Of a stretch of 64,000 bases of DNA, positions 2-58,046 are shown piece by piece. Location: IMG/VR virus record IMGVR_UViG_3300010885_076238, positions 1-64,000 of that record, one strand, 5' to 3'. Numbering within the stretch: position 1 is the first letter of the stretch; each line of letters begins with the position of its first letter. The notes below the pieces were generated by a model. That model worked only from the letters and a program-made list of their open reading frames with translations, did no database searches and was not told where the DNA came from. The translations under genes and the position numbers were made by a program.

Positions 2-1234
2 ACCGAGTCTAGTACAAGTACACCTACTCCAACGTTGACACTGACCAATACTCCAACCGTCACTGAATCTAGTACAAGTACACCTACTCCAACGTTGACA
101 TTGACTCCTACTGTTAATTTCAGTGATGTAGTTGAAATTATCACTACACCTACACCAACGTTAACCGAGTCTAGTACGAGTACACCAACACCAACTAATA
201 CTAATACTCTAACTTTAACAAAAGGTCCTGATTGTGATGTTTTCCTAAGGTTCACACCTACTCCAACACCAACAGAAGCTCCTAATTGTGATGTTTTCTT
301 GAGAGTGACTCCTACAAGCACTTGCACTCCAACTCTAACTCCAACTCTAACTCCTACTTTAACTGCTACTCCAACTTTTACTCCAACCCTTACTCCAACC
401 GATGTGCCTAACATTTTGACAGAACAATCAGAAAAAATATTAACAGAAAATGAAGGCTATATTTTATTAGATTTTCTAATTGGACCAAAACCAACTCGAA
501 CTCTTACTGCCACGCCAACTATTACTCCTACGAGAACTATTACTTCTACAATAACAATAACAAAAACAATAACAAAAACAATGACGCAAACATTGACCTC
601 AACTAGAACAAATACTAGTACTCCTACCCAAACTCAAACTAAAACTTCAACAAGCACTGTCACTTCGACCAGTGCCGCAACCAAAACTCCAACTCCAACT
701 AATACTAACACTCCAACTACAACAAGCACTGTTACTGCTACTAAAACCCCAACTCTAACTTCAACTCTAACTTCAACTAAAACACTAACTCCAACTCCAA
801 ATCCAACCTTAACTTCAACTAATACCTTAACTTCAACTAATACTCCAACTTTAACTTCAACTAAAACACTAACTCCAACTTTAACTAAAACTCCAACTCC
901 AACTCCAACTCCAACACTAACTCCAACTCCAACACTAACTCCAACTCCAACACTAACTCCAACTTTAACTAAAACACTAACTCCAACTTTAACTAAAACA
1001 CCAACTCCAACTTCAACTAAAACACTAACTCCAACTTCAACTAAAACACTAACTCCAACTTTAACTAAAACACTAACTCCAACAACCACGCCTGGACTAA
1101 CATTAACACCAACACCAACAATAATAAATCCTCTCAACTATAGTAGATCAAGTGTAAATAACACTTCTCATACAAATTGGGGTTTGTTAAGATCTATAAT
1201 TTCATCTAATATTAATAATTGGGGGTCTGAATGA
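2..1234 (+). CDS. Pro/Thr-rich mucin-like protein, 5'-truncated by window edge; probably virion-associated
   Basis: Frame is open from nt 2 (TESSTSTPTPT). Long TPTPTLT repeats, two PxCDVFLR motifs, and an ILTEQSEKILTE motif typical of phage structural proteins. Confidence 0.75.
   Translation, partial: TESSTSTPTPTLTLTNTPTVTESSTSTPTPTLTLTPTVNFSDVVEIITTPTPTLTESSTSTPTPTNTNTLTLTKGPDCDVFLRFTPTPTPTEAPNCDVFLRVTPTSTCTPTLTPTLTPTLTATPTFTPTLTPTDVPNILTEQSEKILTENEGYILLDFLIGPKPTRTLTATPTITPTRTITSTITITKTITKTMTQTLTSTRTNTSTPTQTQTKTSTSTVTSTSAATKTPTPTNTNTPTTTSTVTATKTPTLTSTLTSTKTLTPTPNPTLTSTNTLTSTNTPTLTSTKTLTPTLTKTPTPTPTPTLTPTPTLTPTPTLTPTLTKTLTPTLTKTPTPTSTKTLTPTSTKTLTPTLTKTLTPTTTPGLTLTPTPTIINPLNYSRSSVNNTSHTNWGLLRSIISSNINNWGSE
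640..1120 (+). repeat. Coding low-complexity tandem repeats (actccaact / TPT units)
   Basis: Dense ACTCCAACT and ACTAAAACACTA units. A 60-bp-period direct repeat also occurs at 1-100. Confidence 0.9.
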
Positions 1235-29438: not shown

Positions 29439-30288
29439 TAAAATTAAAAAAATTACTAATTGCAAATTTATTTTAAAAGAAGATAAGTGTATTTTTTTAG
29501 ATTTTTATGATAATGAATCTACTTATGGTGGAGTTTTTAGACATTCCACTAAAAAAAAAGAAATTTTAGATCTTTTAAACAATCTTAAAAATATTATTTA
29601 TCTTGATTTAAGAAAGAATAGAATAAACTCAGAGTTTAATCTTGATTTGCCAAATTTAAAACATTTAGATTTAGGTTCTAATTATTTGTCAAAAGTTCCA
29701 TTTTGGATTAAAAATTTATCTTTAGAATATTTAAATTTGGGAGTAAATCAATTAAGTACAGTCCCAGAATGGTTTGCAGAAAAAAAATTTACCACATTGA
29801 AAATTCATAAAAATAATTTAAATCACATGCCTGTTCTCAGAGCGGATAATTTAATATTTTTAAATCTTTATCAGAATAAATTTGAAAAAATTCCTGAATT
29901 TGTTTTTAGTTTATATAAATTAAAATATTTTTGTTGGGGCATGAGTTGTATTGAAGAGATCCCAGAAGAAATTTCGAACTTAGTTAATTTAGAGTGGCTT
30001 TCTTTGGTTCCTAATAAAATAAGATTTTTACCTAGTAATTTTAATAATTTAAAAAAATTAATTGGAATTAGAATTGGTAAAAACAAACTATCAGAAATTC
30101 CAAATTTTTTTGATGAATTTTCTAATTTGAAGCAATTATCTTTATATAAAAATAAAATTAAAAAAATACCTGATAGTTTGTTTAATTTAAATAATATTGA
30201 ATATATAAATATACAACAAAATCCAATAGAAACCAAGTCAATAAATAAATTAAAAAAATATTTAGTCAATGCTAAAATTGAATATTGA
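29416..30288 (+). CDS. Leucine-rich repeat protein
   Basis: About 9 LxxLxLxxNxL repeats. Confidence 0.92.
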   Translation: MKDIEIISKIKKITNCKFILKEDKCIFLDFYDNESTYGGVFRHSTKKKEILDLLNNLKNIIYLDLRKNRINSEFNLDLPNLKHLDLGSNYLSKVPFWIKNLSLEYLNLGVNQLSTVPEWFAEKKFTTLKIHKNNLNHMPVLRADNLIFLNLYQNKFEKIPEFVFSLYKLKYFCWGMSCIEEIPEEISNLVNLEWLSLVPNKIRFLPSNFNNLKKLIGIRIGKNKLSEIPNFFDEFSNLKQLSLYKNKIKKIPDSLFNLNNIEYINIQQNPIETKSINKLKKYLVNAKIEY

Positions 30289-30664
30289 TTATAATAAACA
30301 TATTAATTTTATTAAAAATTTTGATGAAAAAAATATAAAATCTAATAAGAAATTTTTAAAATTATTGTTAAAAAATAATAATTTTAAAAATTTCTTATTA
30401 GATGATATTAGATTTTGTTATTATTTTTGCCATTGGGTCATTGAGGGTCGTTGTGAAGTTTTAGAAGATATTTTTGTTTCAAATTCTTGTTACGCTCTCA
30501 ACTACGCAGCATTTGTATTGAATAGCAAATTACCTGAAAATTTACATAATTGCATGATACTGAAGCATTTATCAGAAAAAGACGAGTGTGCAAATCAATA
30601 TTTTATTTGGCTTCTTAATAAAGAAAATAAAATTAATATCGGTGTATGGGGAGATTACAAATGA
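30269..30664 (+). CDS. Hypothetical protein
   Basis: Overlaps both neighbours; YY..WVIEGR..E and YA..VL..LPE phage-like motif. Confidence 0.6.
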   Translation: MLKLNIDYNKHINFIKNFDEKNIKSNKKFLKLLLKNNNFKNFLLDDIRFCYYFCHWVIEGRCEVLEDIFVSNSCYALNYAAFVLNSKLPENLHNCMILKHLSEKDECANQYFIWLLNKENKINIGVWGDYK

Positions 30665-35103: not shown

Positions 35104-35286
35104 ATGCTTGTTCTTTCAAGGAAGATTGACGAATCTATATTAATTTCTAACAATATCGAATTGATAATTGTTGATATCATTGGAGATAAAGTTAAAATTG
35201 GAATCAATGCTCCGAAAGATGTTAGAATTCTAAGATCTGAAATCTATGAAAAATTGTGCAAAAAAAATATTGTGCAAAAAAAATAA
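35104..35286 (+). CDS. csrA: Carbon storage regulator CsrA (copy 1)
   Basis: MLVLSRKIDESILI...VKIGINAPKDVRILRSEI. Confidence 0.93.
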   Translation: MLVLSRKIDESILISNNIELIIVDIIGDKVKIGINAPKDVRILRSEIYEKLCKKNIVQKK

Positions 35287-36907: not shown

Positions 36908-37542
36908 TCAAAATAATTAAGGAAATTTTACCTAAAGATAAAAAATATTATTTTGCTGTTTCTATGGGGGTTGATAGTGTAGCTGCATATCTCTTTTTGA
37001 GGTCAAAAGGCTATAAGGTTACCCCTGTTCATTTTAATCATAAACTAAGAATTCAAAATGATCTGATGGAGCAGAAGTATATTGAATTATGTAAATTTAC
37101 CAATGTTGATCCAATTGTTGGACATGGCGAAAATTTAACAACAGAATCCGATTGTAGGAATGCAAGGTTGAATTTTTATAAACAATTTTGCCACAATGAA
37201 ACAATAATTACGGCTCATCATATGAACGATTGGATCGAGAGCTATTTATTAAACTGCTTCAGAGGTCAGCCAAATAACGATTGCATCGAATTAACTAGTG
37301 AATTCAAAAGCTTTAAAATAATTCATCCATTCCTTCTATCCAGAAAAAAAGATTTTGAACAGTATCTTGAACGCAACAACTATTTGTGCTATACTGTTCA
37401 AGACGAAACCAATTTCATTTGCAAAGGAAGTAGAAGAAATTGGATTCGGAAGCAGATTTTTCCTGAGATGATTAAAAATAAATTGTCTTTAGAAAAATTT
37501 GCTGAAAGAAAAATAAAAGGAGATTTAGTAGAAAGCATTTGA
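36904..37542 (+). CDS. tilS: tRNA(Ile)-lysidine synthetase, minimal catalytic domain
   Basis: AVSMGVDS PP-loop, HFNHKLR, RNAR, TAHHMND..E..L..FRG, DETN...RNWIR. Confidence 0.88.
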   Translation: MIKIIKEILPKDKKYYFAVSMGVDSVAAYLFLRSKGYKVTPVHFNHKLRIQNDLMEQKYIELCKFTNVDPIVGHGENLTTESDCRNARLNFYKQFCHNETIITAHHMNDWIESYLLNCFRGQPNNDCIELTSEFKSFKIIHPFLLSRKKDFEQYLERNNYLCYTVQDETNFICKGSRRNWIRKQIFPEMIKNKLSLEKFAERKIKGDLVESI

Positions 37543-37567
37543 ATAAGGTAGCGGAATCAAATACATT

Positions 37568-37641
37568 GGGCCATTAACTCAGCTGGTTAGAGTGTCAAAC
37601 TCATAATTTGAAAGTCCTTGGTTCGAATCCAAGATGGCCCA
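37568..37641 (+). tRNA. tRNA-Ile2 (anticodon CAT, lysidine-modified type)
   Basis: Cloverleaf: acceptor GGGCCAT/ATGGCCC, anticodon stem TCAAA/TTTGA with loop CTCATAA, GGTTCGAATCC T-arm, A73, no encoded CCA. C4:G69 and C5:G68 present; no initiator features. Confidence 0.9.
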
Positions 37642-37713
37642 CTTCAGTCACTTTTGATTCCTCTACTTTTATCAAAATGAACTTCTCTGACTTCTAATTT
37701 TTTCACTTAGATA

Positions 37714-43507: not shown

Positions 43508-43705
43508 TTATTGTTCTGCTGCTACTGTTTTTTGTTGAATCTTTTCATCAAGTTCTGATCTTAGTATTACAACATCTTTTTCAGCTTCGACTCCTATTCT
43601 AACCTTGTTCATGTTGTCGATCCTTACAACAGTTAGACGGATGTCCTCTCTTCCAGGTATTCTTACAATAATTGTCTCGTCTTTCTTTCGGCTTAAAACT
43701 AGCAT
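43508..43705 (-). CDS. csrA: Carbon storage regulator CsrA (copy 2, divergent)
   Basis: MLVLSRKKDETI...KVRIGVEAEKDVVILRSEL; AAAGGAG SD. Confidence 0.9.
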   Translation of the reverse strand: MLVLSRKKDETIIVRIPGREDIRLTVVRIDNMNKVRIGVEAEKDVVILRSELDEKIQQKTVAAEQ

Positions 43706-45622: not shown

Positions 45623-45635
45623 TCTAATCTTAAAA

Positions 45636-46403
45636 TTAAAGCCCCGATGTCTTAACCGGCATCGGGGCTTTTTTATTTAATTTATAAAAATCCCAACCAG
45701 TATGATTTTCATTTCTATTAGATTCTAAAAAATGGTAGCCATTGCATTCTTTATATTTTGCATAAGCACAATCATAAATTAATATTTGATCTTCTGGTAT
45801 GACTATTGCCTCATTGTTCATTGTTAAAGCTGCGGTTATAATTCCTTGATCATCATTATGAGCAAGCTCTCTATCTTGTTTCCAATTTCCAATGCATAAA
45901 TTTTTTAATTTATCTTCAAAATCAAAGTTAGGTGGAATTCCAAATAATCCTCCATTTATTATGTATTTTTGATCTATAAAATGATCGTATTGTCCATAAT
46001 ATCTTTTTTGCACCTCTTTTCCATTAACTTTATGACGCTCGCCAGTAAATCCTGATAATATTATTGTTTTTTCTTTTTCTCGCAGAAACTCATCAATTTG
46101 TGGTATTTTATTTGTTATTATTAAGTCATTATCCAAGAAAATTTCATGTGTATTTGGGCTTAGTCTAGGAGGGCAAATTTTCCAAATTTCTTTTATTGGA
46201 GCGTACGGAAGACTATTTGTATATTTTTCTTGATCAATTAACTCTTCATTTATTTCTCTTAATATGTCTTTATTTTTTATTTGATTGTAACAAACAACAA
46301 TGTCGCAATCATAATTTTTTTTAAGTAAATTAATGGATTCTTTTAGTATTTCAAATCCTAAATTTGAAACAGGACCCAGAGTGTATCTAAATAATGGTTT
46401 CAT
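45636..46403 (-). CDS. GT-A glycosyltransferase-like protein
   Basis: IFLDNDLII, INGGLFG, DDQG. Confidence 0.6.
   Translation of the reverse strand: MKPLFRYTLGPVSNLGFEILKESINLLKKNYDCDIVVCYNQIKNKDILREINEELIDQEKYTNSLPYAPIKEIWKICPPRLSPNTHEIFLDNDLIITNKIPQIDEFLREKEKTIILSGFTGERHKVNGKEVQKRYYGQYDHFIDQKYIINGGLFGIPPNFDFEDKLKNLCIGNWKQDRELAHNDDQGIITAALTMNNEAIVIPEDQILIYDCAYAKYKECNGYHFLESNRNENHTGWDFYKLNKKAPMPVKTSGL
45638..45674 (+). terminator. Intrinsic terminator (possibly bidirectional)
   Basis: AAAGCCCCGATGTC/GGCATCGGGGCTTT plus T tract. Confidence 0.85.
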
Positions 46404-56410: not shown

Positions 56411-56770
56411 ATGGCTGAAAAGGAAGTGGTTAATCGGTCTCAGGCGATTCGTGAATATTTGAATTCGGTGAAGCCGTCTGATCGTGGCCCTAGGGCTGTT
56501 AGCGAAGCTTTGAAGGCTAAGGGTCTTAGCGTTAGCCCACAGCTTGTCTCCCAGGTTAAAACTTCTTTGAATAAGAAAACTTCTTCAAAGAAGAAGGGTC
56601 GAGTTTATGATTCTTCTTTTTCAAAGAAGATTAAGAAGTCTCGTCCAGATTGGTTTCAATTGGAAAGTGTTGACACTTTGATTAGTGCCAAGAATCTTCT
56701 TAAGTCTGTTGGTGGAGATTTGAATGCTGCAAAAAAGAATTTAGAAATCATTTCTAAGCTCTTGTCGTAA
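56411..56770 (+). CDS. Planctomycete-type small DNA-binding protein (paralog)
   Basis: VNRSQAIREYL...GPRAVSEALKAKGLSVSPQLVSQVK; LISAKNLLKSVGG. Confidence 0.75.
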   Translation: MAEKEVVNRSQAIREYLNSVKPSDRGPRAVSEALKAKGLSVSPQLVSQVKTSLNKKTSSKKKGRVYDSSFSKKIKKSRPDWFQLESVDTLISAKNLLKSVGGDLNAAKKNLEIISKLLS

Positions 56771-56775
56771 GCAGG

Positions 56776-56830
56776 AAAAGAGAGTAGAATTCCCGTCTGA
56801 GATACGGCGGGAGTTCTATTTCTCTTTTTA
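56776..56830 (+). terminator. Long intrinsic terminator hairpin
   Basis: AAAAGAGAGTAGAATTCCCGTC/GGCGGGAGTTCTATTTTCTCTTTT. Confidence 0.85.
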
Positions 56831-56841
56831 AAAGGATTTTT

Positions 56842-57192
56842 ATGAAAATTGACAAATCTTTAATCTTAATTGCTGTATTTTCAATTGTATCTTGGGAGAT
56901 ATTTTGTTATCAAAATAATCAAATCAAAGTATTGAAAGAATTTGTTGAAATAAATAAAAAATCTCAAGAAATTAACGAAGATGAAATTAGAGATTTAATT
57001 TGTGCAGTTCAAGAAGAAAAAAACAAAAATGAGGGAATTGCTACTCGCAACTATGTCGCTGGAATTTTGGATGGAGTGAATAAAAAAGACTACTACGCCG
57101 AGGTTTGGCATAAAGGATTCGATAGTGGCATTCAAAATAAAATTTTAATAGGAGAATCTGAAAAGGCATATGTTGTGAATAAAGGCGAATAA
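56842..57192 (+). CDS. Hypothetical protein with N-terminal TM anchor
   Basis: LILIAVFSIVSWEIF followed by a coiled region; AAGGA SD. Confidence 0.7.
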   Translation: MKIDKSLILIAVFSIVSWEIFCYQNNQIKVLKEFVEINKKSQEINEDEIRDLICAVQEEKNKNEGIATRNYVAGILDGVNKKDYYAEVWHKGFDSGIQNKILIGESEKAYVVNKGE

Positions 57193-57198
57193 AAATTA

Positions 57199-57356
57199 AT
57201 TTAAGGTGTTATGGATTGGATTGGGATTGCCCACAATCAAAGATAGTGCTTTGATTGAGCAATAACTTAAGCGAGCATAGTTGGTCACTCCAATGATTTT
57301 TGGGAAAGTGAGCGTTGTCGCGTCTCAAAAATAGCACCAATCCATAACCCTTAAAT
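57199..57356 (+). ncRNA. Unclassified structured RNA candidate
   Basis: 20-bp closing stem (57199-57219 with 57337-57356), second stem with G-U pairs, 9-bp hairpin 57234-57257, hairpin 57285-57311. Confidence 0.45.
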
Positions 57357-58046
57357 AAATTTAGGCTTTCTTTTAATTATGCTTGTTGTATCATCAAATA
57401 ATAAAAGATCGTCAATTGATCCTATTAATCCATCTGCTAAGATTTGAATCATTTCATCATTTTCTCTTAATTCTTTGACAATTTCAATTTGCATAGAATG
57501 GACATGGTTGTTAGGATACCATATTCTAAATAATTGATTCATATTGTTTTTCGAACGCCCAGAATATTTTCCTCTTTTTTTTCCTTCATAAACACCGAAC
57601 GATTCGTTTTCTAAAAAATAACAAAAAGCATCTTTTATACGAAGATCACAAGTATATGAAGAAGGATTTCCTTCTCCGTAACCTATAATTAAGTCTAAGT
57701 TTTGATCGGCAACTTCATTTTTTACGCTATTACTGCATCCATGTAAATAAAAAATATAAACTCTGTTGTCTATTTTTTTTAGAATTCTAGCTGTCATTCT
57801 TAGAATTTGTTCTAAAAATTCTTCTTTTATAACATCTTCGTGAACATGACCAACATGATTGCAGTCTGCTTCATCTGCAAAATAATTAAATTTTTTATTT
57901 CTTTTCCATCCTCTGTTTATAACGGCAAAAGCTCCCATCTCAGAGGCAACAGTGTCCGCAATCAAGGCGGTATTTGTATCGTCTAGACCATGGGGAGCAA
58001 CCAAAATTACCGGGATGTCTCCATTTATCAGACTTACTCTTTCCAT
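57351..58046 (-). CDS. N-formylglutamate amidohydrolase / poly-gamma-glutamate-hydrolase-like Zn hydrolase
   Basis: PVILVAPHG, FYLHG, SMQIEI; AAGGAG SD. Confidence 0.6.
   Translation of the reverse strand: MERVSLINGDIPVILVAPHGLDDTNTALIADTVASEMGAFAVINRGWKRNKKFNYFADEADCNHVGHVHEDVIKEEFLEQILRMTARILKKIDNRVYIFYLHGCSNSVKNEVADQNLDLIIGYGEGNPSSYTCDLRIKDAFCYFLENESFGVYEGKKRGKYSGRSKNNMNQLFRIWYPNNHVHSMQIEIVKELRENDEMIQILADGLIGSIDDLLLFDDTTSIIKRKPKFI

What the first reader, a model, noticed from the sequence alone, without database searches (positions are those of the whole stretch)
57199..57356. 158-nt multi-stem RNA candidate near the phage sigma gene
Seen: a 20-bp closing stem, a second stem TTGGGATTGC/GCGTCTCAA and a possible GCAATAAC/GTTGTCGC stem, plus hairpins CAATCAAAG/CTTTGATTG and TCACT.CCAA/TTGG...AGTGA. 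The G-U pairs favour the + strand. This is far more structure than a terminator needs. Inference: a novel ncRNA; a 6S-like RNAP sponge or a CsrA partner (four GGA motifs, mostly paired) are testable ideas. An SD-like site also opens an 11-aa micro-ORF, MDWIGIAHNQR.
Basis: partly seen in the sequence, partly recalled or inferred. Interest (0 to 1): 0.6.

Follow-up and report, generated by a model that had tools for sequence, protein, structure and literature searches.

The report
Structured RNA nested in phage hairpin
The 158-nt stretch is a real, conserved, strand-specific folded RNA element of an uncultured freshwater T4-like phage, about 115 nt of hairpins nested in the loop of the hairpin that ends a small gene's transcript, matching no described RNA family and with no known function.

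Summary
Window 57199-57356 folds far better than shuffles (z -7.2), with a 20-bp closing stem. It is among the most structured places in the 204-kb virus record.

Related phage contigs show what it is. The stem, with an invariant tip GGAUUGG/CCAAUCC, is the hairpin that follows a 116-124-aa membrane-protein gene. In some relatives it is a plain hairpin with an 8-nt loop. In this phage and in four other distinct sequences from three relative lineages, a 115-140-nt multi-hairpin module sits in its loop.

All module-bearing versions share a 3' core of two hairpins plus a 16-nt linker. Nearly every substitution in a stem keeps the pair. All wobble pairs lie on the + strand, and the + strand always folds better. 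The element is more conserved than the flanking genes, and strains about 5% diverged in those genes show no listed change in it.

Rfam has no match. The 6S idea fails. The CsrA-sponge idea is not supported, although the phage encodes two CsrA homologues. The micro-ORF is not conserved.

Most likely this is a new 3'-UTR-borne structured RNA, perhaps released through the long stem. Expression and function were not shown.

The parts
57199..57219 (+). P1, 5' arm of the closing stem (tip GGAUUGG invariant in all seven versions)
   Evidence: 20 bp with one bulged U, pair probability 0.93-1.0. The lower stem covaries between own, type B and the plain hairpins (U-A/G-C/C-G at one position, A-U/U-A at another).
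57337..57356 (+). P1, 3' arm of the closing stem (tip CCAAUCC invariant). Its last 6 nt overlap the stop codon of the convergent 231-aa gene.
57226..57263 (+). 5' domain specific to this phage (type A): AUUGC/GCAAU enclosing CAAUCAAAG-AUAGUG-CUUUGAUUG. It replaces hairpins hp1-hp3 of the type B relatives.
   Evidence: It cannot be aligned with type B, and it has no relatives in IMG/VR.
57264..57279 (+). conserved unpaired linker AAnUUArGCrAGCAnA
   Evidence: the longest conserved single-stranded stretch. No complementary site was found in the phage genome.
57280..57294 (+). hp4: 5-bp hairpin with loop UCACN
   Evidence: C-G to U-A and U-A to C-G double changes, and G-C to G-U
57297..57331 (+). 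hp5: UUUUUrGGA / internal loop / GUGA-GCGUUG-UCGC / UCyyAAAAA, the most conserved part
   Evidence: A-U to G-C double change, G-C to G-U, and an invariant U.G pair. Model R1 scores 82.8 bits here, and this is the only significant match in the own genome.
56842..57192 (+). 116-aa gene (N-terminal hydrophobic helix, no family) whose transcript the hairpin ends. P1 starts 6 nt after its stop codon.
56782..56821 (+). conserved terminator-like hairpin directly upstream of the 116-aa gene, with a promoter-like TTGnnn-16/17-TAGAAT overlapping it. This possibly marks the start of the transcription unit.
   Evidence: inference
57351..58046 (-). convergent 231-aa gene (some homologues are named N-formylglutamate amidohydrolase). 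It was used as the anchor to find relatives.

Best explanation
The element is a structured RNA read from the + strand as the 3' end of the transcript of the 116-aa gene.

Its closing stem P1 is the conserved hairpin that ends this gene's transcript in the whole phage clade. In this phage and three relative lineages, the loop of that hairpin holds a 115-140-nt module. The module has a conserved 3' core (a 16-nt single-stranded linker, hairpin hp4 with loop UCACN, and hairpin hp5) and a variable 5' part.

Shown: the fold, its conservation above that of the neighbouring genes, pair-preserving substitutions, and the strand.

Inferred: the roughly 20-bp stem serves as a 3' stabiliser and as a double-strand-specific (RNase III-type) processing site. 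Cleavage there would set the nested module free as a stable small RNA. That RNA would then act through its conserved linker and hairpins on a protein or an RNA, most likely of the host. The only solitary tRNA of this genome, tRNA-Met, is nested in a long stem in the same way.
For: Structure: z -7.24, and a top-ranking window in the genome.

The stem belongs to the 116-aa gene. The same stem occurs as a plain hairpin after the orthologous gene in L017/L018 and L151-153, in the latter with a different downstream gene. It occurs with a nested module in L019, L020, L143 and L154.

Covariation, type B alignment A4: 57 pairs, 99.6% of cells paired against 31-47% when the partners are slid. Three pairs have changes on both sides. 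Eight one-sided changes all go to or from wobble pairs.

Covariation, core alignment with own: 98.6% paired, 3 double changes, 8 of 500 shuffles as good.

P1 covaries between the three groups.

Strand: the + strand folds better by 2.7-14 kcal/mol in all seven versions, and the wobble pairs would be A.C mismatches on the other strand.

Conservation: the element is 88-94% identical among type B, against 73-83% for the flanking genes. In strains about 5% diverged in either flanking gene, no substitution is listed inside 57145-57359.

Other points: it is single-copy in the genome. No frame is conserved. tRNA-Met is nested in a -24 kcal/mol flank duplex at another convergent junction.
Against: There is no evidence of transcription or of discrete ends. 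The one RNA run holds a contig only at 56574-56719.

Only five distinct sequences carry the module, four of them close kin, so the covariation statistics are weak. The shuffle controls reach the observed values in 6-28 of 500 trials.

No U-tract follows P1 on the + strand, so the way the 3' end forms is unknown. No target complementarity was found in the phage. The phage has no RNase III gene of its own, so processing would depend on the unknown host.

G.T wobbles would also fit a strand-specific single-stranded DNA hairpin. The read-laying table left 12 differences unlisted, so invariance among strains is not proven letter by letter.
Confidence: 0.45

Rival explanations
1. The element is purely cis-acting. 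The whole structure would be an elaborated 3' end for the convergent gene pair, acting as a terminator, a block to exonucleases, or a retroregulation site of the lambda sib kind. No separate small RNA would be produced.
For: It sits exactly between convergent genes, 6 nt after one stop codon and overlapping the other. The relatives' plain hairpin at the same place looks like a bidirectional terminator (L017 has T-runs on both sides). This genome's terminators are unusually long hairpins. On the - strand a U-rich run follows P1.
Against: A plain hairpin does the job in close relatives, so the strongly conserved nested core needs another reason. There is no U-tract on the favoured + strand, and the terminator scan finds nothing here. 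The wobble pairs weaken the - strand stem.
Confidence: 0.25
2. It is a small non-autonomous mobile or selfish DNA element (MITE/PATE-like) that inserts into the loop of this hairpin. Its hairpins would serve transposition as single-stranded DNA.
For: Presence and absence at one precise site are scattered over the gene trees. The plain hairpin clade is nested among element-bearing lineages. The own loop start ATTGGG resembles the plain loop of L151, as if an insert followed it. The element is more similar than its flanks among type B. Subterminal hairpins and G.T wobbles are also features of IS200/IS605 ends (own knowledge).
Against: It is single-copy in the 204-kb record and in every related locus, and always at the same site. 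The record has no Y1 transposase and no reverse transcriptase. No further copy was found in IMG/VR. The 5' half differs completely between type A and type B while the 3' core is kept, which is unlike a transposing unit with two defined ends.
Confidence: 0.1
3. It is a binding partner or decoy for the phage's own CsrA-family proteins, acting through the GGA-containing invariant tip GGAUUGG, the GGAUU repeats and hp5.
For: The window encodes two CsrA homologues above the Pfam cut-off, at about 35104-35286(+) and 43508-43705(-). The own sequence has three tandem GGAUU units at 57213-57229. The tip GGAUUGG is invariant while the rest of P1 covaries.
Against: Four GGA in 158 nt is within expectation. 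No GGA lies in a hairpin loop, and only two are conserved, both paired. The extra GGA of own and of L019 are absent in L143 and L154.
Confidence: 0.07
4. It is a 6S-like sponge for RNA polymerase.
For: The size is similar, it has a long closing stem, and a phage sigma gene lies 830 nt away.
Against: The conserved fold is a multi-branch of short hairpins without a central open-promoter-like bubble. Rfam 6S models give no match even at E<=10 in own or type B. The hairpin is linked to the 116-aa gene, not to the sigma gene.
Confidence: 0.02
5. It is a chance structure, or a small protein gene (the 11-aa micro-ORF or the 43-aa frame on the - strand).
For: An SD-like AAGGTG followed by ATG lies at 57204-57213, and a 43-aa TTG frame lies at 57209-57340(-).
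Against: No frame is conserved on either strand among own and type B, and the micro-ORF's ATG is absent in type B. Conservation and pair-preserving changes argue against chance.
Confidence: 0.02

Closest known systems
3'-UTR-derived small RNAs, and RNase III-processed 3' hairpins of phage transcripts (T7 inter-gene sites, lambda sib) - from own knowledge
   Same: It lies at the 3' end of a gene's transcript, directly after the stop codon. A stem of about 20 bp has the length a double-strand-specific nuclease needs. It sits at a convergent junction.
   Different: The known cases are plain or internally looped hairpins. None has a conserved 115-140-nt multi-hairpin module in the loop. There is no U-tail of the kind Hfq-dependent 3'-UTR sRNAs carry. 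Processing was not tested here.
T4 stable RNAs rnaC and rnaD (species 1 and 2), function unknown
   Same: They are small (119-139 nt), structured, phage-encoded RNAs of a T4-type phage, without a known role.
   Different: There is no likeness in sequence or structure: model R1 finds nothing in the T4 region. rnaC carries a tRNA-like T-arm and lies in the tRNA cluster. Ours has no tRNA-like part and lies in a gene's 3' hairpin.
Bacterial and phage Y-RNA-like RNAs (YrlA)
   Same: A long stem formed by the 5' and 3' ends encloses a structured module.
   Different: There is no tRNA-like module and no Rfam match. The genome record has no Ro/TROVE gene.
CsrB/RsmZ-type CsrA sponges
   Same: It is a multi-hairpin RNA in a genome that encodes CsrA-family proteins, and it contains GGA motifs.
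   Different: Sponges carry many GGA in hairpin loops. Here none is in a loop, and the number is as expected by chance.
6S RNA
   Same: It is of similar length and has a closing stem.
   Different: It has no central bubble, the fold is multi-branched, and there is no Rfam match.
Candidate structured RNAs predicted in viral contigs by comparative genomics (PMC10690425)
   Same: It is the same kind of object: a conserved intergenic fold in uncultured phages with no assigned function.
   Different: That survey worked on IMG/VR, where this family has only this one copy. The relatives found here come from other assemblies. Whether the family is in their list could not be checked.

Membership tests
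6S RNA (Rfam RF00013 and kin) | Match to the covariance model | tested here: not met
   No 6S match at gathering score or at E<=10 in the window region or in type B loci
6S RNA (Rfam RF00013 and kin) | Rod-like fold with a large central bubble that mimics an open promoter | tested here: not met
   The conserved fold is a closing stem plus 3-5 short hairpins at a junction
CsrA-sequestering RNA (CsrB/RsmZ type) | Several GGA motifs, mostly in hairpin loops or single-stranded stretches, conserved among homologues | tested here: not met
   There are 4 GGA in own and 2-3 in type B. None is in a hairpin loop. Two are conserved, both paired. The density is not above the genome background.
CsrA-sequestering RNA (CsrB/RsmZ type) | A CsrA protein present in the system | tested here: met
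   Two CsrA homologues are in the window, at 77.2 and 54.3 bits against a cut-off of 27
CsrA-sequestering RNA (CsrB/RsmZ type) | Binding of CsrA | not testable with these tools
   Needs a gel shift or CLIP
Intrinsic (Rho-independent) terminator | G+C-rich hairpin with a short loop, followed directly by a U-run | tested here: not met
   The scan finds none at 57199-57356. The loop is 115 nt. AAAUAAAUUUAGG follows on the + strand. A U-rich run follows only on the - strand.
Retron msr-msd RNA | Adjacent reverse transcriptase gene | tested here: not met
   No RVT_1 match in the 204-kb record. The neighbours are a 116-aa and a 231-aa gene.
IS200/IS605-derived miniature element (PATE) | Several copies, or a Y1 transposase in the genome, and copies in different contexts | tested here: not met
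   It is single-copy. There is no Y1_Tnp. It is at the same site in all relatives.
Y RNA / YrlA | Ro-binding stem, a tRNA-like module, and an Ro (TROVE) protein | tested here: not met
   No TROVE gene, no tRNA-like match
tRNA / tmRNA | Cloverleaf detected by ARAGORN or Rfam | tested here: not met
New structured RNA family (proposed here) | Homologues with pair-preserving substitutions, strand asymmetry, and conservation above the neighbouring genes | tested here: met
   but with only five distinct sequences
New structured RNA family (proposed here) | A discrete transcript | tested here: inconclusive
   Only assembled contigs of one RNA run could be laid, and none covers the element

The most novel reading that the evidence does not exclude
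The hairpins that end transcripts in this phage clade may serve as landing pads for small RNA genes. On this reading, a portable RNA module (the conserved hp4-hp5 core with exchangeable 5' parts) has been gained, swapped and lost in the loop of one conserved hairpin. The long stem would then double as the processing signal that releases it. The phage's solitary tRNA-Met, nested in a 24-nt inverted repeat at another convergent junction, would follow the same design. That would be a previously undescribed architecture for acquiring and expressing RNA genes in phages. The released RNA might act on a host factor or on the phage's own CsrA-type proteins.
Probability: 0.15. Interest if true: 0.7.

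Novelty: new variant of a known kind. Interest (0 to 1): 0.5.

Why it matters
Large uncultured phages carry many conserved non-coding folds whose roles are unknown. This one offers an unusually clean natural comparison: the same hairpin occurs at the same place with and without a nested, conserved RNA module, in phages otherwise 75-80% identical.

That comparison gives a direct handle on what the module adds, whether mRNA stability, a released small RNA, or a protein decoy. It also bears on how phages gain RNA genes. The phage additionally encodes two CsrA-family RNA-binding proteins, a tmRNA and 14 tRNAs, so it invests heavily in RNA-level control of the host. A new RNA partner in that network would be of interest to phage and RNA biologists.

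If it turns out to be only an elaborated 3' end, it is a minor curiosity.

Tried and rejected
- **Rfam:** the gathering-score search and the permissive search of own and type B gave only chance-level snoRNA-type hits.
- **Cultured phages:** blastn found no match.
- **IMG/VR pattern scans:** the P1 arm, the hp5 core, a degenerate hp4-hp5 pattern and the type B hp2 gave nothing beyond the window itself. One hit was a chance match in a high-GC coding region.
- **Own 5' hairpin in IMG/VR:** 12 matches, all unrelated coding palindromes.
- **17-mer in bacterial genomes:** 120+ hits across unrelated, mostly high-GC taxa. This number is expected by chance, so they were not followed.
- **Relatives of the 116-aa gene in IMG/VR:** none found. 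The single-sequence word search found only a 98% identical strain.
- **Distant relatives (43-51% identity in the 231-aa protein):** they have no spacer at this junction.
- **Core model R1 in two distant relatives' full records and in T4:** nothing found.
- **Target search:** no complementary site to the conserved linker or loops in the phage genome.
- **GGA-dense stretches elsewhere in the genome:** these turned out to be Gly- or Glu/Asp-rich coding sequence, not sponge RNAs.
- **Contigs without DNA:** two relatives (P0124 with a 46-nt spacer, P0126 with a 133-nt spacer) could not be read because no DNA was served.
- **Loop-loop complementarity:** AGUG/CACU in own and GUGA/UCAC in L154 was seen but is absent in L019 and L143, so it was dropped.

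Full report
**1. What is at the site**

Window 57199-57356 fills the whole spacer between two convergent genes. One is a 116-aa gene on the + strand (56842-57192). The other is a 231-aa gene on the - strand (57351-58046), whose stop codon lies inside the last bases of the element.

The + strand folds to -59.6 kcal/mol (z -7.24; none of 200 shuffles as good). The - strand folds to -51.6 (z -6.1).

The window is the first 64 kb of a 204-kb IMG/VR virus record (GC 35%, CheckV completeness 88%), and the element occurs there once. In a scan of 2552 windows of that record, this one ranks sixth after correction for GC. The windows ranked above it are plain long-hairpin terminators and an AT-rich palindrome.

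The phage is of the T4 type. It has a Dda-like helicase, baseplate wedge proteins, a clamp loader and a sigma-like factor.

**2. No known family**

Rfam gives only the tRNA-Met of the window at gathering scores. Around the element it gives nothing better than chance snoRNA-type hits at E<=10, and the same holds for the relatives' versions. ARAGORN finds no tRNA or tmRNA here. Cultured phages have no similar DNA.

**3. Relatives tell what it is**

Distant relatives (43-51% identity in the 231-aa protein; L002-L014) have no spacer at this junction at all. The protein word search then gave a graded series of closer relatives at 61-81% identity. Their contigs were fetched. Three states of the junction appear.

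- **Plain hairpin.** L017/L018 and L151-153 have ..CUAUGGAUUGG - 8-nt loop - CCAAUCCAUAG.. directly after the orthologue of the 116-aa gene. In L151-153 the gene that follows is a different one running the same way. The hairpin therefore belongs to the 116-aa gene, not to the 231-aa gene or the sigma gene.
- **Nested module.** The same stem has a 115-140-nt module in its loop. This is the window itself ('type A'), and L019, L020, L143 and L154 ('type B', five inner hairpins).
- **No hairpin.** Either an extra gene lies between (a 2OG-Fe(II) oxygenase in L144, 76-77-aa genes in L147 and L149), or the 116-aa gene is missing (L015, L021).

The 116-aa proteins of these contigs are 33-54% identical to the window's.

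**4. Anatomy**

Guided by the relatives, the window's element reads as follows.

| Part | Coordinates | Notes |
|---|---|---|
| P1 | 57199-57219 with 57337-57356 | 20 bp, one bulged U |
| Type A 5' hairpin | 57226-57263 | specific to this phage |
| Conserved unpaired linker | 57264-57279 | 16 nt |
| hp4 | 57280-57294 | loop UCACU |
| hp5 | 57297-57331 | most conserved part |

This fold costs only 1.3 kcal/mol more than the unconstrained optimum.

Type A and type B share P1 and the linker-hp4-hp5 core (mean column identity 86% in alignment A5). Their 5' parts cannot be aligned.

**5. Evidence for selection on an RNA fold**

- **Type B alignment.** 57 pairs are 99.6% paired, against 31-47% when the partners are slid by 1-3 columns. 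Three pairs changed on both sides. All eight one-sided changes are between Watson-Crick and wobble pairs. One cell of 228 is unpaired.
- **Core alignment including the window.** 98.6% of cells are paired, with three double changes: C-G to U-A and U-A to C-G in hp4, and A-U to G-C in hp5. Only 8 of 500 shuffles do as well.
- **P1.** It covaries between the three groups. One position reads U-A, G-C or C-G, and another A-U or U-A. The tip GGAUUGG/CCAAUCC never varies.
- **Strand.** The + strand folds better than the - strand by 2.7-14 kcal/mol in all seven versions, the plain hairpins included. The wobble pairs would be A.C mismatches on the other strand. The molecule is therefore read in the sense of the 116-aa gene.
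- **Rate.** Among type B the element is 88-94% identical, while the flanking genes are 73-83%.
- **Strains.** Contigs from other lake samples differ from the window by about 5% in the 116-aa gene (run X5) or in the 231-aa gene (runs X3, X5). The table lists no substitution between 57145 and 57359, only a 1-nt change in the A-run at 57191. Twelve differences were not listed, so this is strong but not complete evidence.
- **No coding.** No reading frame is conserved on either strand, and the 11-aa micro-ORF lacks its ATG in type B.

The sample is small. There are five distinct module-bearing sequences, four of them close kin, so these figures support the fold but do not prove it.

**6. What it is not**

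- **6S RNA:** no model match and no central bubble.
- **Retron:** no reverse transcriptase in the record.
- **Y-RNA-like:** no Ro gene and no tRNA-like part.
- **IS200/IS605-type miniature element:** single copy, always at the same site, no Y1 transposase.
- **Canonical terminator:** the scan finds none, and no U-run follows on the + strand.
- **T4 rnaC/rnaD:** no likeness.
- **CsrA sponge:** the GGA count is as expected, no GGA is in a hairpin loop, and only two are conserved, both paired. Yet the window encodes two CsrA-family proteins, and the invariant tip of P1 contains GGA. A weaker form of this idea, CsrA binding that competes with P1 formation, remains open at low probability.

**7. 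How it most likely works**

*Shown:* it is a conserved, strand-specific fold placed 6-13 nt after the stop codon of the 116-aa gene family.

*Inferred:* the 116-aa gene and its hairpin form a small transcription unit. A conserved terminator-like hairpin lies directly upstream (56782-56821). It carries TAGAAT in its 5' arm, with TTGnnn 16-17 nt before it in the window, L017, L019 and L151. A promoter may therefore overlap that terminator.

P1 is long enough for a double-strand-specific nuclease. The phage has no RNase III gene of its own, so the host's enzyme would act. I take the most likely reading to be that P1 stabilises the 3' end, and that cleavage in P1 releases the nested module as a stable small RNA. 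Its conserved linker and hp4/hp5 would then bind a protein or RNA partner that is still unknown. No complementary target was found in the phage genome.

A parallel in the same genome supports the design. Of 14 tRNAs, only the solitary tRNA-Met (37568-37642) is enclosed by a strong flank duplex (-24.4 kcal/mol; arms 37538-37561 and 37653-37676), and it too lies at a convergent junction.

The main rival is a purely cis-acting 3' end. It does not explain why close relatives manage with a plain hairpin.

A mobile-DNA reading is kept at about 0.1. Presence and absence are scattered on the gene trees, and the window's loop begins like the plain loop of L151.

**8. Novelty and verdict**

This is a new candidate RNA family, unrelated to any Rfam family. 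It has an unusual architecture: a conserved module nested in the loop of a conserved transcript-ending hairpin, with natural plain-hairpin controls.

It belongs to a known kind of object, conserved structured RNAs of unknown function in uncultured phages, of which thousands have been predicted (PMC10690425). I rate it a new variant of a known kind, with interest 0.5. Expression, processing and function remain to be shown.

The operators' limits on read laying were kept (1701 letters).

Noticed in passing
window 35104-35286 (+) and 43508-43705 (-): There are two small genes of the CsrA family (MLVLSRK... motif). Both score above the Pfam PF02599 cut-off (77.2 and 54.3 bits). A phage with two CsrA-type RNA-binding regulators is unusual, and their RNA targets are unknown.
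   Followed up: partly
window 37538-37676: tRNA-Met (37568-37642, +) is enclosed by a 24-nt inverted repeat (37538-37561 with 37653-37676; flank duplex -24.4 kcal/mol) at a convergent gene junction. None of the other 13 tRNAs of the genome has such a stem. The nested design is the same as that of the element studied.
   Followed up: partly
G000 (own genome, outside the window) 183421-187063 and 184864-185213 (-): There is a cluster of nine tRNAs and a tmRNA gene (tag GTNSYAMAA). The record holds 14 tRNAs in all.
   Followed up: no
window 56782-56821: A terminator-like hairpin with a 16-20-bp stem is conserved in all relatives directly before the 116-aa gene. Its tip covaries, and a promoter-like TTGnnn-16/17-TAGAAT overlaps its 5' arm. 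This may be a terminator and promoter in one.
   Followed up: partly
window 30016-30408: Very AT-rich stretch (GC 8-19%) with 35-nt near-perfect palindromes. It is one of the most structured places of the genome and possibly a replication origin.
   Followed up: no
window 326-1083 (inside ORF 35-1234): Arrays of 6/18/24/48-nt repeats (ACTCCA units, Thr-Pro type) lie in a 399-aa ORF next to structural genes. This is probably a flexible linker of a virion or fibre protein.
   Followed up: no
G000 77640-77690 and 124590-124660; window 45625-45684: This phage's terminators are unusually long, near-perfect hairpins (20-27 bp) with A- and T-runs on both sides, so they are probably bidirectional.
   Followed up: partly
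G000 120-170 kb: GC content rises from about 0.32 to 0.41-0.47 over roughly 50 kb of the record. This could be a region of different origin, or the structural or late genes.
   Followed up: no
L144 2183-2635; L147 2199-2432; L149 2193-2423: The junction between the 116-aa family gene and the 231-aa gene is a hot spot for gene gain. Other relatives carry a 2OG-Fe(II) oxygenase or 76-77-aa genes there.
   Followed up: partly
window 57191: One A of the A-run between the stop codon of the 116-aa gene and P1 is missing in contigs of runs X4 and X5. This is the only difference listed near the element among strains.
   Followed up: yes
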